Virus record (IMG/VR): IMGVR_UViG_3300036770_004723
Coordinates: 124,001-188,000 of that record
Strand: one strand, 5' to 3'
Length of the DNA stretch: 64,000 nt
The translations under genes and the position numbers were made by a program. The stretch's first letter is position 1. Each line of letters begins with the position of its first letter. The notes below the pieces were generated by a model. The model was not told the DNA's origin and ran no database searches. It was given only the letters and a program-made list of their open reading frames with translations. Positions 758-63,669 of this stretch are shown here, piece after piece.

Positions 758-979
758 ATGAAAGTACTAGTATCTTTAAGTAAAGGTAAGAAAGGCGGCG
801 GTAAAAAGAAAACAGGTCGAAGTCTGATGTTAAGTACGGTAATGCCACACTTAAGCGGCGAGAATGGAGATCAGCTTGTTGCTGCCGTTGAAAAACTAGA
901 AGGTGATAAAGTTGAGGCCATAATGGTACGAATTGGCAAGAAGTTACGTGAAGAACTTGAGTTAAAGCGTAAGAAGTAA
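758..979 (+). CDS. Small basic protein (73 aa) with N-terminal MKVLVSLS leader
   Basis: GAGGT SD at 749-753, ATG at 758; followed by a terminator. Confidence 0.75.
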   Translation: MKVLVSLSKGKKGGGKKKTGRSLMLSTVMPHLSGENGDQLVAAVEKLEGDKVEAIMVRIGKKLREELELKRKK

Positions 980-1897: not shown

Positions 1898-2129
1898 TTT
1901 ATTATCTAATAGATCCCTTTACAAATATTTGGGTTAATAGATCTTGATCAGATCCGGGGGCTGTGGCTCGACCCGCGCCCACAAAACCCGCGCCCGCGAC
2001 AGCGCACAGCCTCATTTCTATGACACACAGAACGCTGCCGTTCACTAATAAAACACTGCTTTTTGAAAATCTGAAGCTAACCACTGAAAACCTTACTGCG
2101 TATTAAGAGATTTACCGGAAGACCCTTTT

Positions 2130-21668: not shown

Positions 21669-24600
21669 ATGGGAACAACTATTGAAGGACAATACTCTGT
21701 TAGCTCTGATCTTACTTCTATTAGTAATGCAACAGAAGACCTTAAAACAACTTTACTTAAATCTATTGCACCTATTGAATTAAATGAAGCACACAGACAA
21801 GCATATGAAGATGTGTTCTTTACGATTAAAGGCGCGAAAGATTCTAAATTTTCTCAAGACAATTTACGCAGTGCCGTTATTGAAGCACTTAACGTAGGCA
21901 GTAATCTTAACACATTCTTCGCTTTTATTCGGAGAGTGTTTGACTATGCACATTTGTTTGATGATTTACCTAGACAAGAGTTGGAAATGAAAATTCAATC
22001 TCTTGCCAATGAAATGAAAACCAACAATTTGGGTGTGACTGAGGCTGAAGGAAATTTATTTCTCCACGCTTTCCGTTTATTAGATTCAGTAGATAGTGAT
22101 GAAATCCGAAACAACCCATTTAAAGGAAAGCCTGTAGATCAACGTCCAAGCGTTATACCTTTGATAAAAAAATCAACTCGGTACAAAGGTGGCTACGACA
22201 TTATCTATGCAGGTAAAAGTAATCGCGGTGGTATGAAAATCAGTATGTCACCTTACCCACATATTGATCAAGATCCTGTAGGTTTAGGTTACGAACGTAA
22301 AAAACAAACAAATTACAATACAGAAATTGCCTTAAAAGCTGTTAAAGCTGCTAAGCGTATTATGGAAATGATTACCTTACGTAGTGACCAAGGTGCTTTT
22401 TCTGTTGAATCTTCGAACAAAAGAAGATTTTGTCAGTTTCCACTAGATTACTCTTTTGAAAGTTGGAATGACGAAATTTCGAAAATTATGGGAATGAGAT
22501 TAGAGTTTTTCAAAAATCTTGATCCTGTTGTTCGCCCGTATAGAAACTTTTTTAGCGCTGTAGTTATCATAGAGCCTCCTGAAAGTGTTGTTTTCGCTTT
22601 AAATTCTTTTAACACAAGCTCTAGAATGGTAGCCCGTGGTTATAGTTCGCGTCCTGTCGTCCGTCCTGTACTAACCGATATTATTAACGAAGAATCCGCC
22701 TACACACGTCAAGTTGGATCTTCTGTAGCAATTAATTTAGATCTTCCTTTTGTCAAATATATTTGCCAAGATGAATCTACTGATAAAGTTTATTATTGCT
22801 TAAGTACTTGGACTAAGCAATGGACTAGTGCTTTTTTGCGTCCTAAAAATACAAGAGGTGGCGTGAATTTGGATCCTAAAAAAGTTGCAAGGTATATTGT
22901 GCCTTGTAGTCGCTTAGGCTCTATGGAAGAAGCACGTAAAAAATTAGGCTTACACGTATCTGATACTAAAACTAACGAAGATGGCTTAGTTGTAATGCCT
23001 AAAGGTCTTATCAGTTATATGCCAAGACCTGAAGATGCAAGCAATAAAAATGCCGTAGAATTTGAACGTAGTTATGAAGATTATTTACAAACCATTTATG
23101 AATTGAATCTAACACCTGGGCAGTCAGTTGACGAATACACTACAACTATGTTTCCAGATGATCCACGTTTAACCGATGGTTCAAATTTAGGTTCTTTCCT
23201 GCAAGATAAAAAGAAAAACGTCGATTTATATGGCGGTTCGTTACTAGCTTTTAACTGGGATTATGGTACAGCACTTTACGCGCAAACTTCTTCAGATGGA
23301 ATTGCGCAGATTCCTTTGAATGGTTGTTCGCAAATGGATCCGTTAATGATAGCGGATTTCTTAGGTTACGACTTTAAACAAAGCGGTCAAGTTGCTCAAC
23401 ATAAAACGTTCTTAGCTGCTTTAAATGAATTTAAATTTTCTTTTGATTCAAAAGATCGTCTTACTTCAGAAGCAACTTTAAGTACTTTGAGTAAAATGGC
23501 TACTAGTCTAAGGTTGCCTGAAAAATTCACAGACTTAGAAAGCGTACCTATTTACCAACGAGTATTTTTAACGCAACGTATGCTGCACTTATTCGAAGCT
23601 TATTCGTTTTTTGCTGCACGTAATAAAGTTAAAAATATCGAAGAGCTTTTCGAAGAAACAAAAAAACAGATGGGTGTTGATCTGTTTACGACGGAAGGCA
23701 CTCCATTAGATTTCAATCTTTATAACGATCTAATTGGTGATAATATTAGCGCCAGTTCTCTTTCTGTAAGACATAAAGAAGGTCAAGGCGCAATTGTACT
23801 TTGCCTACTTTTACTTGCCTTAAAAGATGCGCAAGGCCGCCCAGGATCTAATTTATTTAACTTTGTGTCAAGAGAAGTAGGGTATCAAAACGCTCCTACT
23901 GAAGTTAAATCTCATGAAGCTTACTTTGATTGTACTTCTCCATCTATTAGAATGGCTGATTTTGGAAATGTATACAATTATTTCGGCGGCAGATTGTTTA
24001 AAAACATGTGTAAGGCCATTACACAAATTCCTAAGAAAGATTTGCTTTACTCTGATCGGGTTAAAGACGAATCGTTTAAAAATAACCAACCTACATCATT
24101 TAACTATATAGCTAATGATGTATTGCCAATGGCTGTAATTTTTAGCAAGTACGTTCCGAATTATTTAGATTATTTTGAAAAAGCTGAAGATATTTTTGAT
24201 CAATATAATCCAGATGAAACTATTGACATCAACGACATTATTGCTCCGGGCATTGAAGCAAATAAAAACAGCACTAAACCTGCGTTGTTTCCTCACCAAG
24301 TAAAAGCAAATCAGTTTTTACGTAAAGCACCTAAGTTCGCAATATTGGACATTAGCCCAGGTGGCGGTAAAACTACAATAGGCATCATTGATATTTTATG
24401 TTTGGCTGAAAAGCATAAAACAGAAAAGTTTGTACCTATTGTACTGGCACCGGATCGTTTGTGTGCTAACTGGTGTGAAGATACTGCGAAGTTTACTAAA
24501 GGTAATTGGAATACTATTCCAATCACTCGTGCTGTTGTTAACGTCTGGGGTTACGATTTACTTTATAAAATCATCAAAGAAGCTCCACGCAATACAATAT

Positions 24601-36370: not shown

Positions 36371-36838
36371 TTGGATTCTTTTATTTATTGGTTACTTTTC
36401 AATAAGCCTAAATTAAAAATGGTGTGGGTTTTTCATAAACCTGTATACAGTATCGTATACAGGAAAGAATTAGTTGTGCCATTACTTGAAAAATATAATA
36501 AAGGTGAAGGCAAATTTAACACTTTGCCTTTTTTAAAACTTGATATAGATAAACGTACTGGCTTCTTTTATAAGATCGAAGATCAATTGTTTTGTCCTAA
36601 ACAACTAGGTGATTGTTTAGTTCAATGTCTTAAAGATCTTTTCGTCTTTTATACAAAAAGATTTGTAAGTATTGAAGATAGATCTGATATGTTAGCGGAC
36701 TGTGATTCTTTATGCAGTAATCTAGTACCTACTTATCTATTAGAGGGTATGTACCACCCATTTGATATGTATTTTAAATTTTTCGCTACTTCCGAAGAAA
36801 ATAAACAGTACCCAAGGAATAACAATGATCTCAATTAA
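36371..36838 (+). CDS. Hypothetical protein
   Basis: TTG start after GGAG, directly after the upstream stop. Confidence 0.6.
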   Translation: MDSFIYWLLFNKPKLKMVWVFHKPVYSIVYRKELVVPLLEKYNKGEGKFNTLPFLKLDIDKRTGFFYKIEDQLFCPKQLGDCLVQCLKDLFVFYTKRFVSIEDRSDMLADCDSLCSNLVPTYLLEGMYHPFDMYFKFFATSEENKQYPRNNNDLN

Positions 36839-51809: not shown

Positions 51810-53486
51810 ATGAACAAAAATTTAAAATTGTTTTTAAGTCAAAGCGCTAAATTTGAACAACTTGACGAGTATACTTGGTATAAATATAATGGAATTCAAA
51901 AAGTACAGATAGCTGTAAGAACACACAAAAGAACGATTGAAAAGAATTCTTTGTTTGGTTTACGTTATACACGTAATGGAACCATATACGTAATATTACC
52001 TGAAATGTATCATGTGGATTTTGTAGTAGACAGGACTACAGCAAACAAGCTTTTGAATAAAAGCGATATCGTTAAACGACCTACTATCAAAAATTTAACT
52101 GATAACAATACTGGAAAAATAATTAGACGAGCTGCTGCTGAAATAGCTGCGGAGTTATCACCTAACAGAGTATGGGATAGCCCTAGATATAAAGCAGCTA
52201 GAAACATAACCAACGAATCCGTTATTGATTACAGTAATTATCAATGGCGTAAAATTTCAGCAGTTGATGGTTTTAAACTAGCTAAAGCAGATAGAAAAAT
52301 GCACTATAAACATAATGATATTATAGGCATGAGATTTATAAAACCTGCCACAGGCGGAGTGCTAATTGATAAAAACTTTAATCGTTTTGTCTTAAACACT
52401 GAAGCTTATGACCGTATTGTATCAGGCTCTAAGGTCTTACCTAAATCAAAATGGCCTGAAGGTAAATTTAGCAAAGAAGAAGCTGAAATAGCTAGACAAG
52501 AAGAATTAATTCTTGCCAAACAAAAACGTGCTTCTGAAAGACGTGCTTTACGTGAATTAGAGGCAGCTAAAAAGCGCGAAGAAGAAAAACTATTAAAATT
52601 AAAATTGGCTGAAGAACGAAAAGAAAGAAAGAGAAAAGAATTAGAGGCAAGAGAATCAGCTACTTTGTTAAATGAACATATAGAACGTGTGCGTAAAACT
52701 GCGGTTATTCCTATGGATGATCGTGATATAAGAGAACGAGTTAAACAACGTAGAAGATTAAGCGCTGAAGATTTAGGTCTTAAAGAAGAGTATTTAGATA
52801 ACTCTGAAAAAGAATTTGAATTGAATTTAGATGGACTTACATTAAATACTGACACCAAGGTCGAAAGGAAAGAAAAACCTGCTGAATTAAAGGACATGTT
52901 AGATCAAGTAATTAAAGATACTAAGAAAGATCTAACTTTGTTTAATATGGAAGATATTGAATCAGACCCTGAAGATTTTGAAGATGATCCTGAAGTTCAA
53001 TATGAAGACAGTGAAGTAGAACATGATCTTTACGAAGATGAAGAAAAGTCTAAAGACCTAGATTTAACAAAAGATCCTGAAGATGAAGATGAAGATGAAT
53101 ATGAGCCTGATGAAGAAGTTGAAATAGCAGAAGATGAACTTGAAGAAGTAGAAGATTCTGAAGAAGACGAACTTGAAGAGAAAAAACCTGAAATTAAATA
53201 TGAAGAAGGTCATGTAATTACTTTTGAACAGGATGCTTCAGAAAGCAGAGAATTTTTAATTTACAGTATCGAACCTTTAAAAGGTAACGATCATATTTTA
53301 ATATATAAACTTTACGATATTGATAACGAACCTGACGAATATAGAACCGTTCGTATCGACACACATAAAAAGCGAAAAATTGAAGATATGGCTAAAATGA
53401 TTCGCAAAGTATCCGCTAAGGATTTCATTAGATATCAAGCTATGGCCGAAGATCTTATGAAAAATCCTGAACCTATTGAGAGTTAA
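51810..53486 (+). CDS. Hypothetical protein with SQSA leader, coiled coil and long acidic tract
   Basis: MNKNLKLFLSQSAK; D/E-rich segment at about 52950-53180. Confidence 0.75.
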   Translation: MNKNLKLFLSQSAKFEQLDEYTWYKYNGIQKVQIAVRTHKRTIEKNSLFGLRYTRNGTIYVILPEMYHVDFVVDRTTANKLLNKSDIVKRPTIKNLTDNNTGKIIRRAAAEIAAELSPNRVWDSPRYKAARNITNESVIDYSNYQWRKISAVDGFKLAKADRKMHYKHNDIIGMRFIKPATGGVLIDKNFNRFVLNTEAYDRIVSGSKVLPKSKWPEGKFSKEEAEIARQEELILAKQKRASERRALRELEAAKKREEEKLLKLKLAEERKERKRKELEARESATLLNEHIERVRKTAVIPMDDRDIRERVKQRRRLSAEDLGLKEEYLDNSEKEFELNLDGLTLNTDTKVERKEKPAELKDMLDQVIKDTKKDLTLFNMEDIESDPEDFEDDPEVQYEDSEVEHDLYEDEEKSKDLDLTKDPEDEDEDEYEPDEEVEIAEDELEEVEDSEEDELEEKKPEIKYEEGHVITFEQDASESREFLIYSIEPLKGNDHILIYKLYDIDNEPDEYRTVRIDTHKKRKIEDMAKMIRKVSAKDFIRYQAMAEDLMKNPEPIES

Positions 53487-53489
53487 AAT

Positions 53490-55460
53490 ATGTTAAAATC
53501 TGAAATTAAAAAATTTATGGATATCGGGTGGGAAAAAGCTACTCGTTCTGATTTTGACAGTTTTTTAGATTATATTGATGATGCTTACTACAACAAAGCA
53601 AAGAAACCTATAACAGACGATCAATACGACCTGTTAAAAGAAAATTACTTTGCTCGTTTTCCTAAGTCTAAGCGTAAGGCAAAAGTAGGTCATAGTACAG
53701 GTAACAAACGTGCTGAAGTAAAATTACCAAATCCTATGAGTTCACTTGATAAAATCAAAGAACCAAAAAAGATTGATCTATTTGCCAAGAAATATGCTGG
53801 ACCTTGGGTTGTAAGTGACAAAGAAGATGGAATGAGTTTGCAGTTGATCTACTTTAATGGTGTACCAAGTGAATTGTATACTCGTGGTAATGGACTTAAG
53901 GGGCAAGACATTTCACATCTTATTCCATACCTGCGTATTCCAAAACGTATTGGTATTAAAACGCCATTTGCAATTCGCATTGAAGGAATTGTTGAAAACG
54001 CCGCATTTGAAAAACACTTGTCTAAAAAATCTGGTGGTGACTTTACAGCTGTACGTAATGCAGCTGGAGGTATCATTAATAAATTGCCTAGCAGCAAAGA
54101 TTTTGATAAGTATGCTGCTTATGCAAAACACATGACATTATTTGCATTCAAGATTCTTGAAGGCAAGGGATATAATCTTAAACCAAGCAAGCAATTTGAA
54201 TTACTGGATTCACTAGGTTTTAAAGTTGTTCCATATAAAATTGTGGACACACTAAACTTTGATATTCTTTCTTCTTTACTCAGTGAGAGACTTAAAGCCA
54301 GTAAATATGATATTGACGGTCTTGTTGTTGAACAAGATAAATACCATGCAGTGGGACACAGTTTACCAAAACATGCTGTGAGCTTTAAAGAAAATAATGC
54401 TGCTAGCATGGTAGATATAAAGGTTAAAGATGTTGTATGGGAAGCAAGTAGAAATGGTATTTTGATTCCTGTTGTGACAATTGAACCTACTAAAATTGGT
54501 GGAGTCATGGTCAGCAATTTTACAGGACATAACGCTTTCTATATTCAACATGGCTATAAAAGTGAATTGAAATCTAAGCCGCCTTATGATCCAAGACCTT
54601 TAGGTAAAGGCGCTATCATCCGTGCTGTTAGATCTGGTGGCGTAATTCCTTACATTGTTGAAGTTGTTAAAGCTGCACGTAAACCTCAAATGCCTGATGT
54701 TGAATACAAGCGAAAAGGCATACATGTAGTATTAGCAGGAAAGCAGAACATAGGGAAAGAATTACAGACTCAGAAAAAGATTGAGCATTTCTTTGTCCGT
54801 ATCGGTGTAGATGGATTTAAGTTATCTACTGTTCAACGTTTTTGGGATAATGGATATACAAAACTTAGTCAGTTTCTTAAACTCAAGAAAAAAGACTTTG
54901 TTAACATTGATGGTTTAGGTGAACGTAAAGCAGAGCAGTTTGAGCAAAGTTTAACTAAAGCTCTATCTGAATTGGATTTTGTAAAACTAGCTGACGCAAG
55001 TGGCTACCTGCCAAATTTTGGAACCAGACGTTTTCAAATGATCGTTGATGCGTATCCAGATGTAATGGCATGGCCTAAATCTAGAATGAGTGATCAAACA
55101 ATTGTAAGTAAAATACAACAGCTATCAGGCTTCAACGAACTAGCTTACGATTTTGCTGATGGCTTACCTAAAATTGTTAAGTTTGCAGATACTTTCGGTC
55201 TTAATATTAAGCAAGTTAAAAAAGTAATAAAGGGATCTAAATTTGCAGGGCTGAACGTTACATTCACCGGTGTCAGAGATTTGATCTTAGGTAAAACTAT
55301 TAGTGAGCAAGGCGGAACAGTGCAAGACTGGCGCAAGGATACTAATTTAGTCTTAATAAAAGAAGTTGGTTTTACTAGTTCTACTGTAGAAAAAGCTCAA
55401 GATGCAGGTGTTAAAATATTAACTGTTGATCAGTTTAAAAAGAAATATAAGGTACTTTAA
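53490..55460 (+). CDS. ligA: NAD+-dependent DNA ligase
   Basis: AYYN...ITDDQYD, MSSLDK, KEDG adenylation motif, YTRGNG..GQDI, RNAAGG, DIDGLVV, RSGGVIP, C-terminal BRCT. Confidence 0.93.
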   Translation: MLKSEIKKFMDIGWEKATRSDFDSFLDYIDDAYYNKAKKPITDDQYDLLKENYFARFPKSKRKAKVGHSTGNKRAEVKLPNPMSSLDKIKEPKKIDLFAKKYAGPWVVSDKEDGMSLQLIYFNGVPSELYTRGNGLKGQDISHLIPYLRIPKRIGIKTPFAIRIEGIVENAAFEKHLSKKSGGDFTAVRNAAGGIINKLPSSKDFDKYAAYAKHMTLFAFKILEGKGYNLKPSKQFELLDSLGFKVVPYKIVDTLNFDILSSLLSERLKASKYDIDGLVVEQDKYHAVGHSLPKHAVSFKENNAASMVDIKVKDVVWEASRNGILIPVVTIEPTKIGGVMVSNFTGHNAFYIQHGYKSELKSKPPYDPRPLGKGAIIRAVRSGGVIPYIVEVVKAARKPQMPDVEYKRKGIHVVLAGKQNIGKELQTQKKIEHFFVRIGVDGFKLSTVQRFWDNGYTKLSQFLKLKKKDFVNIDGLGERKAEQFEQSLTKALSELDFVKLADASGYLPNFGTRRFQMIVDAYPDVMAWPKSRMSDQTIVSKIQQLSGFNELAYDFADGLPKIVKFADTFGLNIKQVKKVIKGSKFAGLNVTFTGVRDLILGKTISEQGGTVQDWRKDTNLVLIKEVGFTSSTVEKAQDAGVKILTVDQFKKKYKVL

Positions 55461-55927
55461 TGAAAACTAAAATGTTACATATAGAATCTGCTACCTTAAA
55501 GGAAACAGTAGATCAAAATGAACGCATTAGAAAGCAAACAGGTGTTATACCTTTTTTTATTGACGATGATGGTGAAATATATGTTATGTTGATTGGCAGC
55601 AGACACGCAGGAAACTGGAGCATACCAAAAGGTAAAAAAGAAAAGCACTTATCCAAAAAAGATAGTGCTGCCATTGAAGCATACGAAGAAGCCGGTATTC
55701 GAGGTGATATACTTGGAAAACTCGGCGAGTACCAGTACAGAAAAGGATCGACTGGTGTAATGCAGAATGTTATAGTTTACGCCATGCAGGTTGAACGTCA
55801 GTTGAAAAAATTTCCTGAACAAGGGATGCGTGTACGTAAATGGTTCACTGTTGATAAAGCTGCTAAAAAAATCGGTAAGAAACTTTCGCATATTGTACTG
55901 GCTGTAAAAGATTATGCCCCTGAATAA
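55460..55927 (+). CDS. NUDIX hydrolase (Ap6A/DIPP-like)
   Basis: WSIPKG...SAAIEAYEEAGIRG Nudix box; FPEQ..R.RKW. Confidence 0.88.
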   Translation: MKTKMLHIESATLKETVDQNERIRKQTGVIPFFIDDDGEIYVMLIGSRHAGNWSIPKGKKEKHLSKKDSAAIEAYEEAGIRGDILGKLGEYQYRKGSTGVMQNVIVYAMQVERQLKKFPEQGMRVRKWFTVDKAAKKIGKKLSHIVLAVKDYAPE

Positions 55928-55946
55928 AACTTTGTAGGAAAACATT

Positions 55947-56843
55947 ATGTTCAGCAGCTTGGATATATCTACCGATTATTGGAGACATTTTATTCCAGTT
56001 GCACCTGACATTGATATAACTGTAGTACTGGGCGAAGAAATTTTTATTGATCTTCGCCCATTTATCATTCAAGGTGCTAGGGATTTTTTCGATCAAAGTA
56101 GTCCAGACACAAATGTAATACCTGATAAAGTACCTAGTCAGCGCGGCTGGCGTCTTGAATATTTTATTACGGTTCCACCTAAAAAAGGAACTATTAAAAA
56201 AGAAACATTTTTAAATGGTTTCATTTATAAGCCTGATAAAGGTGCCGGTAACTCTAATGACTGTTTTAACTATCAGCTTAGTAACGGTACTCAATTATCC
56301 CATCACGGAAAAATAAATATCACTATTATAAAACAAAGTGATAATGTCTGGGAAATAATAGGATTCAGACCAGATGCTAACGCAGGAATAGATCCAGTTG
56401 AATTCGAAATGCGTATGAGTGTTAAATCTACGCATGTTTCCTATCCTTTATATAGTGTAAAAGGCTTTAAGTGGTTTGTTGAAAACATACGAGTAGTAGA
56501 TGGGTACGTAGTAAAAACTATGGATCTAGTACATTCATTCAGAACCTATATGAATTCATCTACTGATGAAACTTATGTCATTTCTGATGGAGCTATTTTA
56601 CCTAAACGTATGTATAAAACAGATAAAGATATATTAGGTATTGATCCCTCCACACAAAGAAGATATGTACCTACAAATAAATTTCCTATGGTTATATGTG
56701 AATTTTGGAATTTCCCTCATAAACGCCAAGGTGAGTACGGTCCTGTAACTGACATGAGCAGACCTGAAATAAAACAATTTAAAATTCAGGATTTCCATTC
56801 AATTGATTGGAACCTTAGCGGATCTATAAAACTACCTGAGTAA
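55947..56843 (+). CDS. Ig/cadherin-like domain virion protein
   Basis: PPKKGTI...FIYKP....DCFNYQLSNG...GKINITI, a Big_9-like pattern. Confidence 0.65.
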   Translation: MFSSLDISTDYWRHFIPVAPDIDITVVLGEEIFIDLRPFIIQGARDFFDQSSPDTNVIPDKVPSQRGWRLEYFITVPPKKGTIKKETFLNGFIYKPDKGAGNSNDCFNYQLSNGTQLSHHGKINITIIKQSDNVWEIIGFRPDANAGIDPVEFEMRMSVKSTHVSYPLYSVKGFKWFVENIRVVDGYVVKTMDLVHSFRTYMNSSTDETYVISDGAILPKRMYKTDKDILGIDPSTQRRYVPTNKFPMVICEFWNFPHKRQGEYGPVTDMSRPEIKQFKIQDFHSIDWNLSGSIKLPE

Positions 56844-56850
56844 ACAACAC

Positions 56851-57939
56851 ATGAAACTTGCATCTTATACAGTAGTAAATAACAATATTAATGTTTTACC
56901 GAATTTAGTAAAAACTTTGGAGAAAGTAGATCTAATATTTATAATGGACCTATCAAGCTCTGATGGAAGTTATGAATTTATTTCTGATTGGGCAGAAAAA
57001 GATCATAGGGTGAAAATATCAGAATATAATAATGAAGATGAATTACAAGCACGAAACATGCTATTACACATGGTTCAAACTAGTTTTGCACACACTGCGA
57101 TTTACATAGATCCAAGCTGTGTTTTAACCGATTTGGATTGGGTAGCCAAATTAAAACTTCTTGATTTAAAAAATTCATATTCCGTTTCAGTTAGCCAACT
57201 TGTATTAAAAGATAATGCACCTAAAATTTCTTATGTATCTAAAGAAACTTTAATACATTCATCTACAGCCAGAGCTAGCTATGTTCATACAGATAAACCT
57301 AGATTGTTAGTATCAAACGATGTTGTAGATTCAGGAATTCATTTTATACAGACCTTGGATCGACCTTTGACTGAAAAATCAGTTACGTATTGGCAGGATA
57401 ATCGAACCGACTGTTATGCGATTTTGTTGGCCAGTAATTATTTATCTGATTTTTCAGATTATGAAGAATTCGTTAAACTTGCATTACCTAATGTAATTGA
57501 ACAACTTGATATCCATTTAGATATCTACGCGATTCAATCACTTTTAAGTTTCTATCAAGTAACAGGCAAAGAAATATACCTGAACATCCTTTCATTTTAT
57601 TGCCCGTCGTTATACGAAGTAAGTTTATATAAAGGACTCAATCGAATTCAAGATAACCCTATTGTTGCCTTAGGTTATTTTACTGAAAGTCTTGAAAGAG
57701 TCGATCTTGGTTATAATTTAACTGTATATAAAGATCCTCAAGCTAAATCCAATCTTTACCATTATATAGCTGTTTCCTATAACAATATTTATGAAATAAC
57801 TGGACTAGATTTTCATAAGGCTAAAGCTGTAGAGTTTTTGAATTTAGTTGTTGCATTAGATCCAACAAACGCAAATGCTAAATTAGATTTGGATTATATG
57901 TTAAAAGAGAAACCAAATAATGAAAAAGAAGTGTGTTGA
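56851..57939 (+). CDS. Glycosyltransferase family 2-like domain (degenerate) fused to TPR-like repeats
   Basis: IFIMDLSSSDGSYE is GT2-like; no DxD (YIDPS); C-terminal KAVEFL...VALDPTNANA is TPR-like. Confidence 0.62.
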   Translation: MKLASYTVVNNNINVLPNLVKTLEKVDLIFIMDLSSSDGSYEFISDWAEKDHRVKISEYNNEDELQARNMLLHMVQTSFAHTAIYIDPSCVLTDLDWVAKLKLLDLKNSYSVSVSQLVLKDNAPKISYVSKETLIHSSTARASYVHTDKPRLLVSNDVVDSGIHFIQTLDRPLTEKSVTYWQDNRTDCYAILLASNYLSDFSDYEEFVKLALPNVIEQLDIHLDIYAIQSLLSFYQVTGKEIYLNILSFYCPSLYEVSLYKGLNRIQDNPIVALGYFTESLERVDLGYNLTVYKDPQAKSNLYHYIAVSYNNIYEITGLDFHKAKAVEFLNLVVALDPTNANAKLDLDYMLKEKPNNEKEVC

Positions 57940-59515
57940 AATCAAACCATTTTATTCTATATCGGCTAGACGTGAAATAACGGTTGAGCCTGATTGGTGG
58001 AAAAAACTCGGTGAAGCTAGTCGTAAAAATTATTTAAAGAAACATCCAACTAGCCAAATGGCTAAATTTATTAAGAAGCAAGAAGAAAAGAAAAGAAAAG
58101 CACGTCTTAAAAAAGCTGAAAATAAAAAATCAGAGTTACCTAAGGTAAATCATGTAGATCCTGTTGTTGAAGTAAAACCTGAAAAAGTAGAAACAAAAAA
58201 TGCAGGTAAGAATTTCGCAGAACGGGTAAACACTAGATTAAAAGATTTTTTCTCAAATAAAAAACAAAGAATCAAAGATTACACTAGTGTACAGTTAAAA
58301 GCAGTTGGAGAAAAGATTACTCGTCAGGAAATCAAAAGACGTGCTGCTGAAAAACTACCTTATATAAAAGAAACCTTAATGGAATCTCAGAAAAAATTCA
58401 TGTCCAGCATAAACTCTGTTGGATCTTATATAGATAATTCACTTTCACCTGTTAAAAAACAAAATTTAGGTGAGTGGTTAAAATCTAGATTAACAGGTAA
58501 AGGCAGTAATGAAGCCGGAGAAAAGACGGGAAGTTTGATTGCTGTTAATATTATAACAGCTGCTTTAGGCTTAGGTGCTTTGATTGCAGTAACATCTGGT
58601 GTTGCGCCTCTTGCTGGTGCATTAGCCGGTGCATTTTTTGGATTTAACGATTACCGTAGATCTCTTCCAGATAAAGTAGTAGAAGAAACGAAGAAACGAA
58701 GAAGCAAAAAGAAACCTGTACAGGATTTAAAAGATGAATCTGCAAAAGATTTGTATAAAGAAGAACCTGAGGCCGTAAACCAAGAACCTGAAACATTAGA
58801 TCAAGCATCTAAAGAAATAGATCTAGCCGTAGCTGATGTTGAAAAAGCTATGGAAACCTCAGATGATGTTGTTGAAAAAGCCTCAGAACTTGAATCTAAA
58901 TCCAATGACGAACAAGAGATAGTAGATAATCCTGTCAGATACTTAACTGAAGAAATCGCGTTATGGTTAAAAGATCAAGATCAAGATCTAATTGCGAATA
59001 AAATAGCTGAATTAGCTGCTATAGAGGAAATGATAAACGAAGGTTATTCACCTAACGTTTCAGATCTTTCCGATGAAGAAATTGATAAACTTCTAAACAG
59101 TGATGTAGAGATTATCTCAAATCATCTTCAAAGTTTATCCGAAGAAAAAGAAGATTATGAAAGCGAATATGTACCTGATGCCACTGTTAAAAAACTAACT
59201 TTACGTTGCGACAAGCAGTGCATTAGATTACCTTTGAACGAAAGATGGCGATACAATATCCGTTATGGTGACAGTATAATAGGTAATATCCGGTGCATCG
59301 TAAAGAACACTGGAGGTAAATTTAGCCGTAATTGGATTTGTGTTTTAGAAGACGGCTTCAATGAAAGCGTGTACCGGTCAGGTAAGCCTATTCTAAACAA
59401 TGAGCCTTATACCTTGATTAAAAACGGAAAAATTTACCTAGTGAATCCTATTAAACAAACATTTGATGAAACTTGGTCTTGGGCTAAGCTTAATATCGAC
59501 AAGGATTTTTTATGA
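57920..59515 (+). CDS. Putative internal head/ejection protein with hydrophobic hairpin
   Basis: FYSISAR leader; basic N-half; Gly/Ala-rich hydrophobic stretch; acidic C-half. Confidence 0.68.
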   Translation: MKKKCVEIKPFYSISARREITVEPDWWKKLGEASRKNYLKKHPTSQMAKFIKKQEEKKRKARLKKAENKKSELPKVNHVDPVVEVKPEKVETKNAGKNFAERVNTRLKDFFSNKKQRIKDYTSVQLKAVGEKITRQEIKRRAAEKLPYIKETLMESQKKFMSSINSVGSYIDNSLSPVKKQNLGEWLKSRLTGKGSNEAGEKTGSLIAVNIITAALGLGALIAVTSGVAPLAGALAGAFFGFNDYRRSLPDKVVEETKKRRSKKKPVQDLKDESAKDLYKEEPEAVNQEPETLDQASKEIDLAVADVEKAMETSDDVVEKASELESKSNDEQEIVDNPVRYLTEEIALWLKDQDQDLIANKIAELAAIEEMINEGYSPNVSDLSDEEIDKLLNSDVEIISNHLQSLSEEKEDYESEYVPDATVKKLTLRCDKQCIRLPLNERWRYNIRYGDSIIGNIRCIVKNTGGKFSRNWICVLEDGFNESVYRSGKPILNNEPYTLIKNGKIYLVNPIKQTFDETWSWAKLNIDKDFL

Positions 59516-60051
59516 AACCTAAAATTTTAGCTTTAAGTAGTGGTACTGCAATTTTGTGTGATTCGGATTACGAAGCTCAATCTTTAGTTGATTTTCCACC
59601 TAATGAGCCTTTAAATTTATTTAAAGTTTTGGATTTCGTTAAAGCAATGTACGATGATGCAATTTTTGCCCTGCAAAAGGCTACCAGACCTGTATCTAAT
59701 TCTAAATTCAGTCAAGAAAAAATTGCATCTGATTTCGAAGCACTGGAAAAAGCAATAAATTTTCATCTGAGAAATCAGCACAACGGTCTGCACGAAGTGT
59801 ACAATTGTTTAAATTTACTCAGAAACCGATTAGATTTGGAAACTCGATCCAAACATCCTGTACCTAATTGTTTAAAATTGAAAATTTATCTTGATACTAT
59901 TTGCAGTAAATTTGTACAAGAAAACAAAGGTATTGATTTGCTTGCTACCATGATATTTGAAGACGGTAAGAGTTTACGTAAAAATCCTCTTCTTAAAACC
60001 GACCACGAAAAACGCCTTGAAGAGTATCTGGCCAAAAAACAATTAGATTGA
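59512..60051 (+). CDS. Hypothetical protein (MKPKILALSS leader)
   Basis: AAGGA SD; ATGA overlap. Confidence 0.72.
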   Translation: MKPKILALSSGTAILCDSDYEAQSLVDFPPNEPLNLFKVLDFVKAMYDDAIFALQKATRPVSNSKFSQEKIASDFEALEKAINFHLRNQHNGLHEVYNCLNLLRNRLDLETRSKHPVPNCLKLKIYLDTICSKFVQENKGIDLLATMIFEDGKSLRKNPLLKTDHEKRLEEYLAKKQLD

Positions 60052-60058
60052 GGTAAGT

Positions 60059-60853
60059 ATGTTAAACAAGAAAATAGATTTAAATTTTAAATCAAGTTCT
60101 TTTGATCTTAGTATGTTGAATCGTTATAATATAGGTGAAGGCGAAGGTCGTGGTATTAGTTTGCATGAATTATCTAACAAGAATAAAAACATCGAAGTTA
60201 AGCCTGATATGGCAGGTGGCTGTGATAATGTTATTCTCGATGTTAACTGTTGGCTTCCCGCTGCCGCAAAAGAAATGAATATTAGCCCTAATATTCGTGA
60301 TTATGTAATGGTCCCGACTCCGGCACTTATTACAGATCTGCCTAATACAAACGGTGATAGTGCTAGCCTTAAAGAATTATTACGCTTTAATGTTAAGATG
60401 GGACGTCAAGCATACAAAACGTTTCAGGGTAAACCTACGTTTGTTGAACACGCTAACTCTGATCACACTAAAGCTAAAGGCATTATTCTTGATGCTTATT
60501 TAAAACCTTTAAAAGGATTCAAGGGTGAATTAGCTAAGTTAGTTTTATTATTAGCTTACGATAGAACCCGTGATCCAGAAGCTTGCAATAAAATTCTTAC
60601 CAATCGCTGTAATACTCATAGTGTTGGATTTTATTATACAAGTTACACTTGTAGTATTTGTGGCCATACAACACATCAAGACACTATGAAATTGTGTAGC
60701 CACACTCGATTAATGAAAAAACCTTATATGTTGAACGGCCGTATTTGTTATCGTTGGTGTCATGAGATTACAGGATTCGAATGTAGTCAAGTTGAAAATC
60801 CTGCGTATGTCAGTAATCAACACGATCATAGCAAAATTCTTATGGTGAGATAA
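60059..60853 (+). CDS. Putative prohead (capsid maturation) serine protease, HK97/herpes-assemblin fold, with Zn-finger insert
   Basis: NTNGD, GKPTFVEH (His), HSVG (Ser), CSICGH...CSH, FECSQVENPA (Glu, E-x-S-x-V-x-x-P-A). Confidence 0.72.
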   Translation: MLNKKIDLNFKSSSFDLSMLNRYNIGEGEGRGISLHELSNKNKNIEVKPDMAGGCDNVILDVNCWLPAAAKEMNISPNIRDYVMVPTPALITDLPNTNGDSASLKELLRFNVKMGRQAYKTFQGKPTFVEHANSDHTKAKGIILDAYLKPLKGFKGELAKLVLLLAYDRTRDPEACNKILTNRCNTHSVGFYYTSYTCSICGHTTHQDTMKLCSHTRLMKKPYMLNGRICYRWCHEITGFECSQVENPAYVSNQHDHSKILMVR

Positions 60854-60854
60854 T

Positions 60855-61802
60855 ATGGAATTCAAATACATTGCAGATATACCATTCGTTTACGGTGATT
60901 GGTTTAAGATTTCAAATGACAACCCATTTTATTCTGTAACAATGGATAGTAGGTTAAAAGTAAAAGATGGTAACGGAGCTATTTCTCCAATTACTTTTGA
61001 AGAGTTACGTCAATTACTATTGAATAGCACTACAACAATGGGTAATCAAATTAACCATGCTGAAGTATTCGCTTCATTATTAGATACAGATGTAGAAACT
61101 TTGGCTAAAACCGGTGAATTACCTGATTTCACTAAAACCGCTTCCACGAGTAATGGATATTCTGCTTATCGAGTGGTAAATAATACTATACCCTTAGGTA
61201 CATCTATACCACCTAAATTTACATTGCTTGACCGTGCTAGTGTTTGGTCTTCTCGTGACATACTTCCTCTTGAAGGTATAGAGCAAGTTGCTGTAGATAA
61301 TGCACTAAATCATTTGGGCAATAAAATGATTACAGCACAAAAGAAATTCATTTTATGTAAATCACACCAAATCCCTACTTGTTACGGTCAGTCATTTAAA
61401 AGTAATCAACTAGATGTACATCAATACATAATCTTAAACTTCCATCAATTACAAGGTATTGCTTCTGGATCTGTAACTGCCCAATTTATATGTCAGGTAC
61501 TTACACACGAGTACGCCCATTATATTTTCGATCACGGTATAAAACTTTCGCAGAAAGAAAGATTCAAAAAATTATTTGCAGGACGTGGTGTGCATAAGGA
61601 TCAATTCAACCATCCCGGTTATGAGTATCCTTGGTATAAAGAGGCATGGGCTATATTATGTGAATACATGGTGCATGGTAAATCTGCTCGTGGTCTTAGC
61701 ACTGTTGAAGGTTGGGAAATCGCTGAGCAATACTTTGACAATAATTTTATTAAGAACGGTCATCCTACAGGTGATAGTCTTGAACATTTGATTAAGGTGT
61801 AG
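60855..61802 (+). CDS. Zincin-like metallopeptidase
   Basis: VLTHEYAHY (HExxH) and downstream EAWA third-ligand motif. Confidence 0.7.
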   Translation: MEFKYIADIPFVYGDWFKISNDNPFYSVTMDSRLKVKDGNGAISPITFEELRQLLLNSTTTMGNQINHAEVFASLLDTDVETLAKTGELPDFTKTASTSNGYSAYRVVNNTIPLGTSIPPKFTLLDRASVWSSRDILPLEGIEQVAVDNALNHLGNKMITAQKKFILCKSHQIPTCYGQSFKSNQLDVHQYIILNFHQLQGIASGSVTAQFICQVLTHEYAHYIFDHGIKLSQKERFKKLFAGRGVHKDQFNHPGYEYPWYKEAWAILCEYMVHGKSARGLSTVEGWEIAEQYFDNNFIKNGHPTGDSLEHLIKV

Positions 61803-61804
61803 GT

Positions 61805-62500
61805 ATGAAAATCACAATACGTATGTTCAGCCTATCTAATAACGTAGTCCCATTGATTAAAATACCTAATCTAGCTGAATTACACGAACTATTCAAGAAC
61901 CTTAAACTTAAGAATAACTCTGATCCTAAAGTAATGTCTGATTTTAAACATTTATATAAAATTTATGAAGTAGCTTCTGAAACAGGGCCTTATAAAATTG
62001 CAGATGAATGTTTTGACTTGCTTTCAGACTTAAGACTGGCACGAAATGTCTTAGCTGTCGAAGGTGCTTTTAAAGATACTGTTGTGCAGGCGTGGATAAA
62101 AAAATTTGAGATTGAGCCTCAACTAATAAATGTAACTCGTGTGGCAACAAAACAGAGTTTACTGCAAGCATCAAAAGAAAGAAATGTAAAAGCGAAAAAA
62201 GCATTTAATGATTTGATGGATAAAGCAAAAGCAGTATCACAAGATCTAAAAAAGCAAAACTTAAAGAAGCTTAGTAAAGCAGTTATGACGTTCTCAGAAT
62301 TGCTTGACTCTGAGCGTACATATTTGAGTAAGAGAGAGATTGAAAAATATGAAACACTAATAAAGTTGTTAAACATTGAAATCTCCTTAAACTCTGAAAA
62401 CCTAGATGTTCAAGAGCGATCAGATTTACTCAAACAAAAGAGTTTAGTATTAGTGCGCTTTAGCAAACTTGACGGCATAAACCCATTTACTTTAATATAA
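61805..62500 (+). CDS. Helical hypothetical protein (MFSLSN leader)
   Basis: AAGG SD; 231 aa. Confidence 0.72.
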   Translation: MKITIRMFSLSNNVVPLIKIPNLAELHELFKNLKLKNNSDPKVMSDFKHLYKIYEVASETGPYKIADECFDLLSDLRLARNVLAVEGAFKDTVVQAWIKKFEIEPQLINVTRVATKQSLLQASKERNVKAKKAFNDLMDKAKAVSQDLKKQNLKKLSKAVMTFSELLDSERTYLSKREIEKYETLIKLLNIEISLNSENLDVQERSDLLKQKSLVLVRFSKLDGINPFTLI

Positions 62501-62503
62501 GGC

Positions 62504-62893
62504 ATGAAAATGAAAATTAAGGTTAGATTAATCTCTACTTCGGCATCTAATAGTAAAACTCCAGAAATTAAATCAAAAATATCTGAATTGGCTTCTTTGC
62601 TTTTTGAGTCAAAAAATAAAATAATTAAAGAACTTAAAGTAACCAAGCCTTTAGTTAAATCTGTTGAATCACTAGGTTACGCTGTTCGATTGGCGCGTAA
62701 GTCTCACGTAGCGCAGAATAAATTAGATGATCTTGCTTCTTTGCTTGGTGTTAATCCAGCACATTTAACATCTGCTGTAGATAAAACAGGTTATTGTCTT
62801 CATTTCAGTTCAGGTGCTGCAACTAAAGCCATAGCTTCTTTAAAAAGAATGGCTAAGGCAGAATCTGTGGAGAGTTCTTCTAAAAAAGCCTAA
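62504..62893 (+). CDS. Basic hypothetical protein (LISTSA leader), possibly truncated
   Basis: 129 aa; the following gap looks like decayed coding sequence. Confidence 0.65.
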   Translation: MKMKIKVRLISTSASNSKTPEIKSKISELASLLFESKNKIIKELKVTKPLVKSVESLGYAVRLARKSHVAQNKLDDLASLLGVNPAHLTSAVDKTGYCLHFSSGAATKAIASLKRMAKAESVESSSKKA

Positions 62894-63114
62894 TAGAGAG
62901 TAACCTAAGAAAAGAATAAGATCTTTTAGATAAAGGACTTGAAATTGCGGCCAAATGAATTTGCTTTTGCTGATCGGGTAGAAACTTGTTGTTAAAAATT
63001 CTAAAACTCACGATGTAAAAAGCTTTAATTACTCCGGCAAAAACTATTACATATAACATCACAGAATCTGCGACTGCTCTCCCATTTAAACGACGTTAGT
63101 ATTAAGGAAGCACA

Positions 63115-63669
63115 ATGAAAATTTTCGTATCGCAATCAGCTGAAGTTACACAGCAAACTTTAAAACGTAAGATGAAAATCGGCGCTAAAGTACAATTACT
63201 TATGGTCGCTTCTCCTTCAGAAATAGGAACTTTAGGTCGAGGCAAAGCATCTGTAACAATAGCACATAATTATGTTGTTACAGATATTCAAACAACTAAA
63301 TCAGGTGACATTAAAAACTGTACACTTACAGTAAAAGGACCTAAGCCTTCACCGACATTAGGTTTAAAATCTGTTGAAGTACTAACCGCAACTACATTGG
63401 CTAAGTTGATGTCAACTAAACTTAATAAAGATTCAAAAGTTGGAACTAAATCTTTAAAGTTTGTCACGGTAAAATCTAAAGACACTGCTATGGGTAACGC
63501 TAAAGATTCCAAGTTAGCTCAACTTAAAGATAAAGTTAAAGAACTTGAATCTGCATATAAAAAGGCGATATCAGATTACCATAAAGCAGAAACTGCTGTT
63601 GATAAGGCAGATAATGCACTTGATAAAGCGAAACGTGCTTTAGATCTTTATATGAGTAAAACGCTGTAG
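63115..63669 (+). CDS. Basic protein with MKIFVSQSA leader and C-terminal coiled coil
   Basis: AAGGA SD; 184 aa. Confidence 0.78.
   Translation: MKIFVSQSAEVTQQTLKRKMKIGAKVQLLMVASPSEIGTLGRGKASVTIAHNYVVTDIQTTKSGDIKNCTLTVKGPKPSPTLGLKSVEVLTATTLAKLMSTKLNKDSKVGTKSLKFVTVKSKDTAMGNAKDSKLAQLKDKVKELESAYKKAISDYHKAETAVDKADNALDKAKRALDLYMSKTL

What the first reader, a model, noticed from the sequence alone, without database searches (positions are those of the whole stretch)
51810..63669. Shared N-terminal S-x-S leader on many unrelated proteins around the prohead protease: candidate capsid-addressing and maturation code
Seen: unrelated proteins begin with a short basic/hydrophobic leader ending in [SAIN]-x-S followed mostly by a small residue. 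Examples: MKIFVSQS-A (63115), MKMKIKVRLISTS-A (62504), MKITIRMFSLS-N (61805), MLNKKIDLNFKSSS (60059, the protease itself), MKPKILALS-S (59512), ...KPFYSIS-A (57920), MKTKMLHIES-A (55460, NUDIX), MNKNLKLFLSQS-A (51810). Elsewhere in the window: MKVLVSLS-K (758), MKQAAINIS-A (21303), MGIS-A (20178, HNH), GQYSVS-S and TSIS-N (21669, SNF2), VYTIALS-N (14875). I did not see it on polA, the clamp, SbcCD, ligase, the sheath or the fibre proteins. Known: T4 internal proteins carry a ~10-aa capsid-targeting propeptide removed by gp21; T4 and phiKZ proteases cut after Glu; herpes assemblin cuts Ala-Ser. Inference: this lineage uses a Ser-specific code (S-x-S|small) that tags head cargo and is clipped by the 60059 protease. 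The packaged and injected proteome, including enzymes, could then be predicted from sequence, and the leader could be a portable encapsidation tag.
Basis: partly seen in the sequence, partly recalled or inferred. Interest (0 to 1): 0.85.

Follow-up and report, generated by a model that had tools for sequence, protein, structure and literature searches.

The report
Shared head-protein leader ending Ser-x-Ser
Many unrelated proteins encoded around the head-maturation protease of this giant phage start with the same short leader ending in Ser-x-Ser, probably a tag that puts them into the capsid and is then clipped off; if so, the proteins the phage injects could be read from sequence.

Summary
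In the window plus 15 kb downstream of the same contig, about 16 of 75 proteins begin with M-(K)-hydrophobic run-S-x-S. A strict 5-residue form occurs 14 times at N-termini against 1.1 expected. Twelve of the 15 N-termini with the looser motif lie from 51810 onward, around the head protease.

The Ser codons come from both codon families, and the mature parts are mutually unrelated. The leader survives in relatives whose protease is 45-75% identical, while the rest of these proteins diverges beyond recognition.

The same S-x-S also sits in three other conserved places:
- the disordered N-terminus of the protease itself
- two places in the capsid-protein propeptide
- the N-terminus of the 2022-aa helicase, whose PaBG orthologue is a virion protein

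Of 119 distant KMPT-N proteins, 112 carry a small-x-small site, mostly S-x-S|A.

Best reading: a T4-CTS-like propeptide whose cleavage motif has small residues at P3 and P1 instead of Glu. Cleavage and packaging are inferred, not shown. The feature is not special to this lineage. Verdict: a new variant of a known kind, of moderate to high interest.

The parts
60059..60853 (+). Prohead (head maturation) serine protease, 264 aa. H131, S188 and H215 are invariant. The N-terminus is disordered and carries S12-S13-S14|F15.
   Evidence: phrog_18299 E 1e-90. 29-sequence alignment with its invariant residues. AF2 model pLDDT 79.8. Foldseek: the top PDB hit is T4 gp21, weakly; many BFVD prohead serine proteases match.
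60059..60100 (+). The protease's own leader, MLNKKIDLNFKSSS|F. The S-x-S-F is conserved in clades A-D, and reads A-T-A|F in L049.
51810..51845 (+). Leader MNKNLKLFLSQS|A of the 558-aa KMPT-N protein.
   Evidence: Pfam PF20294. Orthologue alignment A4. AF2: residues 1-11 are disordered and the fold starts at residue 15. 119 family representatives.
55460..55489 (+). Leader MKTKMLHIES|A of the NUDIX hydrolase (155 aa).
   Evidence: Pfam NUDIX. The L014 orthologue has ...PLKSLA|AG before the conserved ERVRKQTG.
57920..57964 (+). Leader MKKKCVEIKPFYSIS|A of a 531-aa protein, followed by a conserved (D/A)WW motif.
   Evidence: Orthologues: NCTB ...VSLS|NQEADWW, L016 MDYGITSLS|AEEAGWW, L026 ...ESLS|QSTAWW.
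59512..59541 (+). Leader MKPKILALSS|G of a 179-aa protein.
   Evidence: The L014 orthologue is MKKAKLFLSTS|G.
61805..61837 (+). Leader MKITIRMFSLS|N of a 231-aa protein with no detectable homologue in relatives.
   Evidence: SD spacing favours 61805 over the internal Met that the JGI call uses
62504..62542 (+). Leader M(KM)KIKVRLISTS|A of a 129-aa protein. The likely start is 62510.
   Evidence: The L014 orthologue is MKVNILISES|A at 70% identity. RBS spacing.
63115..63138 (+). Leader MKIFVSQS|A of a 184-aa protein. Its paralogue MKVFISHS|A lies just past the window end.
21669..21725 (+). Probable 19-aa N-terminal propeptide ...DLTSIS|N of the 2022-aa SF2 helicase-like protein.
   Evidence: In one alignment column NCTB reads ESLS|A and PaBG gp202 reads VSLA|A. 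PaBG gp202 is a 221-kDa virion band (PMC7412058). Helicase_C/ResIII domains.
758..781 (+). Candidate leader MKVLVSLS|K of a 73-aa, very basic protein. Not verified in relatives.
   Evidence: no orthologue found

Best explanation
The leader is an N-terminal propeptide of the kind known from T4 as a capsid targeting sequence. It is a 5-19-residue stretch: Met, often Lys, a short run of alternating hydrophobic residues, then [S/A]-x-[S/A] followed mostly by Ala.

Proposed mechanism:
- The leader marks proteins destined for the inside of the prohead.
- These include fast-evolving internal or ejected proteins, a NUDIX enzyme, KMPT-N proteins, the giant SF2 helicase and the protease itself.
- The phage's gp21-like prohead serine protease (60059) removes the leader by cutting after the second small residue.
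- The same motif marks cuts in the capsid-protein propeptide, at about residue 33-37 and about residue 62-73, and probably in the portal.

What is shown: the motif, its enrichment, its protein-level conservation on unrelated proteins across clades, its position at disorder/fold boundaries, the protease identity, and the virion location of one orthologue.

What is inferred: the scissile bond, the enzyme responsible, and the targeting role.
For: - Enrichment and clustering near the head module.
- More leaders directly downstream of the protease, before portal, scaffold and MCP.
- The mature parts are mutually unrelated.
- Ser codons at P3 and P1 come from both AGY and TCN families.
- The leader is kept, with variable P2, in orthologues from L014 (protease 75% identical), NCTB/L016 (about 48%) and Erwinia/Dickeya phages (about 45%), while the proteins themselves diverge.
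- The protease N-terminus has a conserved S-x-S|F in a disordered segment. L049 switches to A-x-A both there and in its KMPT-N and 8088 proteins.
- Every MCP of clades A-D has an x-x-S site, mostly S-x-S, in the otherwise variable linker at residues 62-73. PaBG reads APS|A at about residue 70, which matches the published loss of about 20% of MCP mass (PMC7412058).
- Among 119 distant KMPT-N representatives, 58 have S-x-S|A and 112 have a small-x-small site, about 10 residues before the conserved Trp.
- MAFFT places S-Q-S|A-K over PaBG-clade I-A-E|A-K, that is, over a canonical T4-type I-x-E site.
- AF2 puts the site at the junction of a disordered leader and the folded domain.
- PaBG virion bands include gp202, the giant-helicase orthologue, and gp83, which starts MLIKINLLE|A.
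- T4 internal proteins are likewise diverse, with only a conserved CTS (PMC3012670).
Against: - No mass-spectrometry or N-terminal sequencing data exist for any S-type site.
- Every gp21-type protease characterised so far cuts after Glu (PMC10052503).
- Two leaders read S-x-S-A-E, and all MCPs keep G-E-(I/V)-N-A just after the first S-x-S, so Glu cuts remain possible.
- PaBG has both S-type and E-type candidate sites, so a clean change of specificity is not established.
- Some leaders are only 5-6 residues long, which is short for a targeting signal.
- In KMPT-N proteins the motif could partly reflect family homology.
- The PDB fold match to gp21 is weak (E 0.14), and Pfam protease models do not hit.
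- Genome-wide enrichment in NCTB is modest (9 against 3.8 expected, p 0.017).
Confidence: 0.6

Rival explanations
1. The leader is a real targeting or recognition element, but the protease still cuts after Glu as in T4, phiKZ and SPN3US. The cut would fall a few residues downstream, or some substrates would not be cut at all. S-x-S would then be part of the binding surface and not the scissile site.
For: All characterised relatives cut after Glu. The window has SQSAE and SHSAE. 'hSES' leaders could be read as h-S-E|S. G-E-(I/V)-N-A is invariant in the MCPs. The PaBG clade has h-A-E|A.
Against: Glu sits at no fixed distance or context after most leaders. In the KMPT-N paralogue MLISIS|VTPSYAW there is no Glu before the fold begins. 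The S/A column is what is conserved across 119 KMPT-N proteins. L049 changes S to A coherently in several substrates.
Confidence: 0.2
2. The leader is a short structural N-terminal beta-strand, or a conserved piece of a few protein families. It would have no role in packaging or processing.
For: The alternating hydrophobic pattern looks strand-like. In the family of 60855, clade B proteins start MKVNVL/MKIDVL directly before a W motif, without S-x-S. The KMPT-N conservation could be plain homology.
Against: The same motif occurs on mutually unrelated proteins. It also occurs inside the MCP linker and on the protease N-terminus. AF2 leaves it disordered and outside the fold. It clusters around the head module.
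Confidence: 0.1
3. Another enzyme removes the leader: a host signal-peptidase-I-like enzyme following the -3,-1 small-residue rule, or a Prp-like enzyme as for staphylococcal phage 80alpha.
For: Small residues at -3 and -1 with Ala at +1 resemble the A-x-A rule. MLKLNL... in NCTB superficially recalls the L27 leader.
Against: The leaders are 5-13 aa with only 3-5 hydrophobic residues, too short for Sec export. No second protease was found in the window. Cultured relatives infect Gram-negative hosts, which lack the L27/Prp system (established knowledge). The protease itself carries the motif.
Confidence: 0.07
4. Chance or composition: Ser-rich N-termini plus the common MK start, or a nucleotide-level signal at gene starts.
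For: N-termini are somewhat Ser- and Lys-rich.
Against: Shuffles never reach the observed count. Strict motif: 14 against 1.1 expected. Ser codons are mixed between AGY and TCN. The motif is conserved across clades with variable P2.
Confidence: 0.03

Closest known systems
T4 capsid targeting sequence (CTS, MKTYQEFIAE|) of internal proteins IPI-III, cut by gp21
   Same: A leader of about 10 aa at the N-terminus, starting MK. It is shared by otherwise unrelated, fast-evolving head-internal proteins encoded near the head genes, and it ends at the protease motif. The PaBG-clade versions (MLMIAE|A) even end in I-A-E.
   Different: In T4, P1 is Glu (L/I-x-E). Here P3 and P1 are small (S-x-S, S-x-A, A-x-A) and P1' is mostly Ala. 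Leader length varies from 5 to 19 aa. Targeting and cleavage are untested.
phiKZ / 201phi2-1 / SPN3US propeptides cut by gp175/gp245 at (S/A/G)-x-E
   Same: Jumbo myoviruses with many cleaved head and ejection proteins. P3 is small (Ser/Ala), P4 is hydrophobic, P1' is small. The protease cuts itself, and the portal and MCP carry propeptides.
   Different: In those phages P1 is always Glu and most propeptides are 100-250 aa. Here most are very short N-terminal leaders and P1 is Ser or Ala.
Herpesvirus assemblin (V/L-x-A|S), the same protease clan
   Same: Serine protease of the same fold class, with small residues at P1 and P1' and a cut within scaffold and protease.
   Different: The order is reversed (Ala|Ser against Ser|Ala). 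The sites are C-terminal or internal, not N-terminal tags.
Staphylococcus phage 80alpha capsid and scaffold leaders cut by host Prp (L27-like MLKLNLQFFA|S)
   Same: A short N-terminal leader of 13-14 aa, removed from several head proteins.
   Different: The enzyme there is a host cysteine protease with an F-A|S motif, found in Firmicutes only. Here the motif differs and the cultured relatives infect Gram-negative hosts.
Signal peptidase I, -3,-1 (A-x-A) rule
   Same: Small neutral residues at -3 and -1, following a basic and then hydrophobic N-terminus.
   Different: The hydrophobic core is far too short, and nothing suggests export of these cytoplasmically assembled proteins.

Membership tests
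T4-type capsid targeting sequence / N-terminal head propeptide | Short N-terminal leader shared by otherwise unrelated head-associated proteins | tested here: met
   16 proteins. Their mature parts are unrelated except for 2 weak pairs.
T4-type capsid targeting sequence / N-terminal head propeptide | Leader conserved among relatives while the cargo proteins are hypervariable | tested here: met
   Window against L014, NCTB and L016.
T4-type capsid targeting sequence / N-terminal head propeptide | Leader ends in the protease motif with Glu at P1 (L/I-x-E) | tested here: not met
   It ends in S-x-S (or S/A-x-S/A). Glu occupies this position only in some PaBG-clade orthologues.
T4-type capsid targeting sequence / N-terminal head propeptide | Leader removed in mature virions by the prohead protease | not testable with these tools
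   Needs N-terminomics. Indirect only: the site lies at a disorder/fold boundary, and the PaBG MCP loses about 20% of its mass.
T4-type capsid targeting sequence / N-terminal head propeptide | Leader sufficient to encapsidate a foreign protein | not testable with these tools
   Needs leader-GFP packaging experiments.
Prohead serine protease (T4 gp21 / HK97 gp4 / assemblin fold class) | Characteristic fold | tested here: met
   BFVD matches annotated prohead serine proteases (E 1e-7 to 1e-4), phage G gp19 and phiRSL1. The top PDB hit is T4 gp21, but only weakly (E 0.14, TM 0.48).
Prohead serine protease (T4 gp21 / HK97 gp4 / assemblin fold class) | Invariant catalytic Ser and His | tested here: met
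   S188, H131 and H215 are invariant in 29 homologues. Their superposition on the gp21 catalytic residues was not checked.
Prohead serine protease (T4 gp21 / HK97 gp4 / assemblin fold class) | Match to curated sequence models (Pfam S77/S78/U35) | tested here: not met
   No Pfam hit at E <= 0.01. PHROG 18299 'head maturation protease' matches at E 1e-90.
Prohead serine protease (T4 gp21 / HK97 gp4 / assemblin fold class) | Encoded in the head module next to portal, scaffold and MCP | tested here: met
   Portal, scaffold-like protein and MCP lie 9-12 kb downstream on the same contig. Order is syntenic with NCTB and JA11.
Sec-type signal peptide | Hydrophobic core of at least 7-8 residues and total length of at least about 16 | tested here: not met
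   The leaders are mostly 5-13 aa with 3-5 hydrophobic residues.
KMPT-N domain proteins (PF20294) | Pfam model above the gathering score | tested here: met
   51810: 45.2 bits against a cutoff of 28.9. The paralogue at L012 20046-20693 carries PF20294.

The most novel reading that the evidence does not exclude
A large branch of the gp21-type prohead proteases of jumbo phages (NCTB-, Erwinia/Dickeya-, PaBG- and Lu11-related phages and many uncultured ones) has moved from Glu to small residues at P1, following a '-3,-1 small' rule: S-x-S|A. These phages would use a 5-13-aa portable N-terminal tag. The packaged and injected proteome could then be predicted from sequence alone. It would include a 2000-aa SF2 helicase, a NUDIX enzyme, KMPT-N proteins, some of them fused to an SprT-like peptidase domain, and hypervariable internal proteins.
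Probability: 0.45. Interest if true: 0.75.

Novelty: new variant of a known kind. Interest (0 to 1): 0.62.

Why it matters
If the tag works as inferred, it would give three things:
- A sequence rule for listing the proteins these little-studied jumbo phages carry into the cell. These are candidate anti-defence and takeover factors, including enzymes.
- A natural example of a change in P1 specificity, from Glu to Ser/Ala, within the gp21-type capsid proteases.
- A very short encapsidation and processing tag that could be used to load foreign proteins into large capsids, as the T4 CTS is used.

It would also explain the conserved N-terminus of the widespread KMPT-N family.

Tried and rejected
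- **A clean 'Ser-type against Glu-type by protease clade' model.** Rejected. PaBG has h-A-E|A on some orthologues but S-type sites on its protease, MCP, gp202 and gp84.
- **Fetching orthologues of the SNF2 region from viral contigs.** Two scans returned only the source contig. The NCTB and PaBG records were used instead.
- **The search for homologous proteins on the KMPT-N paralogue.** It gave only 4 hits. The full HMMER profile search replaced it.
- **Structure job with the NCTB row.** It was rebuilt without that row.
- **S1-pocket comparison.** Not possible, because model coordinates are not exposed. One candidate difference was noted (Asp/Glu in IT[DE]LPNTNGD against Ser in the PaBG clade) and not pursued.
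- **PDB sequence searches.** They gave only the phage G MCP (6wkk), and nothing for the protease.
- **Literature.** No paper found reports cleavage sites for this phage group.
- **tRNA and Rfam scans of the window.** Both empty.
- **megablast of the region against phage genomes.** No match.

Full report
**Context**

The window is bases 124001-188000 of a 286,584-bp uncultured jumbo-phage contig (IMG/VR UViG_3300036770_004723 = JGI Ga0310126_0000034). GC is about 34% and all genes lie on the + strand.

Gene order is syntenic with Phage NCTB, Pseudomonas phage PaBG and the Dickeya/Erwinia jumbo phages. In order, the window holds:
- clamp loader, SbcC and SbcD
- neck and virion genes
- an HNH gene
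- a 2022-aa SF2 helicase-like protein (21669)
- DNA polymerase I (28354)
- sheath (38625) and fibres
- a KMPT-N protein (51810)
- NAD-dependent ligase and a NUDIX protein
- a glycosyltransferase-like protein
- the protease (60059)

Downstream of the window the same contig carries a run of small proteins, then portal, a scaffold-like protein, the MCP and a second sheath gene.

**The protease**

- 60059-60853 matches PHROG 18299 'head maturation protease' at E 1e-90.
- tblastn finds 45-50% identical genes annotated as prohead core or head maturation protease in NCTB, JA11, AD1, Alexandra and PaBG.
- No Pfam model hits it.
- In 29 homologues H131, S188 (in NTHSVG), H215, E241 and three Cys are invariant.
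- An AF2 model (pLDDT 79.8, pTM 0.80) has a disordered N-terminus (residues 1-13) and C-terminal tail (248-262).
- Its best PDB match is T4 gp21 (5jbl), but only weakly: E 0.14, TM 0.48.
- In BFVD it matches PaBG, phiRSL1, phage G gp19 and many proteins named prohead serine protease.

I accept it as a divergent member of the prohead serine protease fold class.

**The observation**

The quoted N-termini are correct. In the window plus the 15 kb downstream, these proteins start with a leader:

| Start (window coordinate) | Leader and site | Protein |
|---|---|---|
| 51810 | MNKNLKLFLSQS\|A | KMPT-N protein |
| 55460 | MKTKMLHIES\|A | NUDIX |
| 57920 | ...KPFYSIS\|A | 531 aa |
| 59512 | MKPKILALSS\|G | 179 aa |
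| 60059 | ...NFKSSS\|F | protease |
| 61805 | MKITIRMFSLS\|N | 231 aa |
| 62504 | M(KM)KIKVRLISTS\|A | 129 aa |
| 63115 | MKIFVSQS\|A | 184 aa |
| 64033 | MKVFISHS\|A | paralogue of 63115 |
| 64933 | MKKLTITLVSTS\|K | 114 aa |
| 65295 | MKITLVSTS\|K | 206 aa |
| 65955 | MIISIS\|S | 452 aa |
| 67332 | MKIKLFISES\|N | 127 aa |
| 77865 | MLISIS\|V | KMPT-N paralogue |
| 758 | MKVLVSLS\|K | 73 aa, basic |
| 21669 | ...DLTSIS\|N | giant helicase |

Sources.

Statistics:
- [LIVFMYA]SxS in the first 22 aa: 15/75 proteins against 50/1003 interior windows (p 4e-6). Among 388 pseudo-N-termini starting at an internal Met, 14 carry it. Shuffled N-termini give a mean of 6.0 and a maximum of 13 in 2000 shuffles.
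- The strict five-residue form occurs 14 times at N-termini against 1.14 expected (p 3e-11).
- A scan of all 400 a-x-b patterns, not guided by the hypothesis, puts SxS first after the trivial Met patterns. This holds in this clade (30 observed, 10.2 expected) and in the NCTB clade (32 observed, 8.9 expected). It does not hold in the PaBG clade.
- Twelve of 30 genes from 51810 onward have the motif, against 3 of 45 before it (Fisher p 7e-4).
- The mature parts of the 16 proteins are unrelated, apart from the pair 63115/64033 and a weak 57920/65295 hit.
- The Ser codons at P3 and P1 are split between AGY and TCN, so selection acts on the protein and not on a DNA or RNA signal.

**Conservation**

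With the protease as anchor I fetched 41 related loci and built a protease tree:

| Clade | Members |
|---|---|
| A | window, L014/15 (75% identity) |
| B | NCTB, L016-18 |
| C | PaBG, L027, L029, L045, L049 |
| D | Erwinia/Dickeya phages |
| More distant | L002-L008, L048, L050-L052 |

Window and L014 orthologues keep the site while P2 and the flanks change:

| Window | L014 |
|---|---|
| FLSQS\|AKFEQ | LLSLS\|AKYDE |
| LISTS\|A | LISES\|A |
| FISHS\|A | MLSES\|A |
| LVSTS\|K | LCTS\|V |
| LVSTS\|K (second gene) | FISSS\|N |
| ILALSS\|G | FLSTS\|G |
| FKSSS\|F | FVSSS\|F |
| HIES\|A (NUDIX) | KSLA\|A |

NCTB and L016 have their own, non-homologous small proteins after the protease, and these carry the same leader: MKVFLSES, MKIISIS|A, MKIVSIS|A, MLISIS|L, MEIFISLS|A, MNITINLSSIS|A. 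[quoted passage not shown]

**Sites outside the N-terminal leaders**

1. The protease N-terminus keeps S-x-S|F in clades A-D, PaBG included. L049 has A-T-A|F, and the same phage has MNLALA|A and MLVAIA|A on two other proteins. That is a coherent Ser-to-Ala change across substrates.
2. The MCPs carry L-S-x-S|T-G-E-(I/V)-N-A at about residue 33-37 (MTALSS|NGEVNA in the window phage).
3. The MCPs carry a second site in the otherwise variable linker at about residue 62-73: window FASLS|N, JA11 VSES|H, L024 SSES|A, L030 HSTS|A, L032 HSHS|G, L043 HSQS|A, NCTB VTS|A, PaBG APS|A at about residue 70.
   - The PaBG paper reports that the MCP loses about 20% of its mass on maturation (PMC7412058). Twenty per cent of 368 aa is about 74 aa.
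   - The deposited phage G MCP chain (6wkk) starts at the residue aligned to window MCP residue 70.
4. The giant helicase: MAFFT puts window TSIS|N, NCTB ESLS|A and PaBG VSLA|A in one column, 12-14 residues before the first conserved block. PaBG gp202 is the 221-kDa band of the published virion proteome.
5. The portal has six strict motifs against about 0.9 expected from its length.

**The KMPT-N family as a broad test**

Both KMPT-N paralogues carry the leader in every S-type clade. MAFFT aligns S-Q-S|A-K of the window with I-A-E|A-K and Y-A-E|A-K of the PaBG clade and with A-L-A|A-A of L049. The S-type site therefore occupies the position of a canonical T4-type I-x-E site.

A profile search of 1.84 billion representatives found 381 relatives. 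Results for the top 150:
- 119 have the domain at the N-terminus.
- 112 of those have a small-x-small site.
- The commonest forms are S-x-S|A (58), A-x-A|A (10) and S-x-A|A (8).
- P4 is Ile, Leu or Val.
- The modal leader is 6 aa (for example MLISLS|A).
- The site lies a modal 10 residues before the conserved Trp.
- My site-picking rule rewards S and A, so the proportions are approximate. The raw list shows the same picture, plus a few h-A-E|A cases.

AF2 on the first 100 aa of 51810 gives pLDDT below 50 for residues 1-11 and a confident fold from residue 15. The site therefore lies on the boundary between a flexible leader and the domain.

**Independent genome**

I reassembled the NCTB record from its pieces.
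- 26 of 321 N-termini have the motif, against 4.3% of interior windows (p 0.0016).
- With the strict form there are 9 against 3.8 expected (p 0.017).
- Six of those nine fall within 168.9-194.9 kb, around the head genes.
- The leader is therefore a minority feature, about 5% of proteins, concentrated at the head module. A few carriers lie elsewhere, for example an FHA-domain protein.

**Interpretation**

The most economical reading is a CTS-like propeptide whose terminal motif is the recognition site of the phage's own prohead protease, with small residues at P3 and P1.

This departs from every gp21-type protease characterised so far:
- T4: L/I-x-E (established knowledge)
- phiKZ: S/A/G-x-E (established knowledge)
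- SPN3US: A-x-E (PMC10052503)

It is not foreign to the fold class, since herpes assemblin cuts Ala|Ser (established knowledge).

Which bond is cut remains inferred. The main rival is that cutting still follows Glu:
- SQSAE and SHSAE in the window
- h-S-E|S readings of some leaders
- the invariant GE(I/V)NA in the MCPs

Against this rival, Glu has no fixed position after most leaders and is absent before the fold in MLISIS|VTPSYAW. PaBG has both kinds of candidate site, so P1 may be permissive (S, A or E) in that clade.

Other rivals are less likely, for the reasons given under the rival explanations:
- a structural strand
- another protease
- chance

- All eight in-range examples stand. The NUDIX example is supported by its L014 orthologue.
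- 'TSIS-N' on the SNF2-like protein is supported, and is the most interesting case.
- 'GQYSVS-S' on the same protein is not conserved in the orthologues.
- MGIS-A (HNH) and MKQAAINIS-A (21303) have no conserved counterpart in NCTB or PaBG.
- VYTIALS-N is internal and not conserved.
- The claim that 'this lineage' uses a special code is too narrow. The feature spans several genera of cultured jumbo phages and many uncultured ones.

**Novelty**

I found no publication describing this leader or a Ser/Ala cleavage rule for these phages. That search covers only the open-access library held here. I rate the finding a new variant of a known kind: the T4 CTS and gp21 system.

Noticed in passing
window 980-2130: A 1.15-kb stretch with no convincing gene. 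It has a strong terminator-like hairpin (ggtggcaaatttgccacc + T run, about 1000-1024), a (CTTTT)13 microsatellite at 1718-1784, a repeated 16-mer gtttgccgggtgttgg at about 1622 and about 1796, and a GC-rich patch at 1950-2010. No tRNA or Rfam hit.
   Followed up: partly
window 21669-27737: A 2022-aa SF2 helicase-like protein (Helicase_C, ResIII). Its PaBG orthologue gp202 is the largest band (221 kDa) of the published PaBG virion proteome, so a giant helicase is probably packaged in the virion.
   Followed up: partly
window 14088-14759: A Lys/Ala/Pro-rich protein with KAPAGKAPKAP repeats at its C-terminus (histone-H1-like composition) and no leader. PaBG gp191, at the syntenic position and also very basic, is a virion protein found in several gel bands.
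   Followed up: no
window 35717-36370 and 36371-36838: Two ORFs in the same frame, separated only by a TAA stop. The NCTB orthologue (210 aa) matches the first piece only. Possible read-through, a split gene, or two separate genes.
   Followed up: no
L012 11736-14024 (window-equivalent 69555-71843): The portal protein is 762 aa, about 115 aa longer than in NCTB, JA11 or PaBG. It contains six strict h-S-x-S-small motifs, four of them in the first 260 residues. This suggests a long propeptide cut several times, as in SPN3US.
   Followed up: partly
window 38625-40283 and L012 17159-18778: Two tail-sheath paralogues about 36 kb apart. The published PaBG paper describes the same arrangement for the PaBG/Lu11 group.
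   Followed up: no
L009, L027, L029 (PaBG clade): Several small proteins start h-I-R-I-x-x-D-G-[ST]-[FV]-E|[AST] (for example MTAIRIYLDGTFE|ATAAK). This is a second leader type, ending in Glu, next to S-type sites in the same genomes.
   Followed up: partly
L050 and L048 (distant clade E): Many small proteins begin M-[KR]-K-h-h-V-R-h-x-E-T-[SG]-S (MKKLVVRIIETSS, MRKIIVRFTETGS). This looks like a differently worded leader of the same kind.
   Followed up: no
window 61805 and 62504: Public gene calls disagree on the starts. The JGI call starts the 61805 protein at Met7 and so loses the leader. The Logan call starts the 62504 protein at 62510. Automatic annotation can hide or truncate these leaders.
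   Followed up: yes
NCTB record 9071-9514 and 137634-138005: Leader-like N-termini far from the head module: an FHA-domain protein (MNILISLS|S) and a small protein (..MQLWISLS|A). These are possible further packaged proteins.
   Followed up: no
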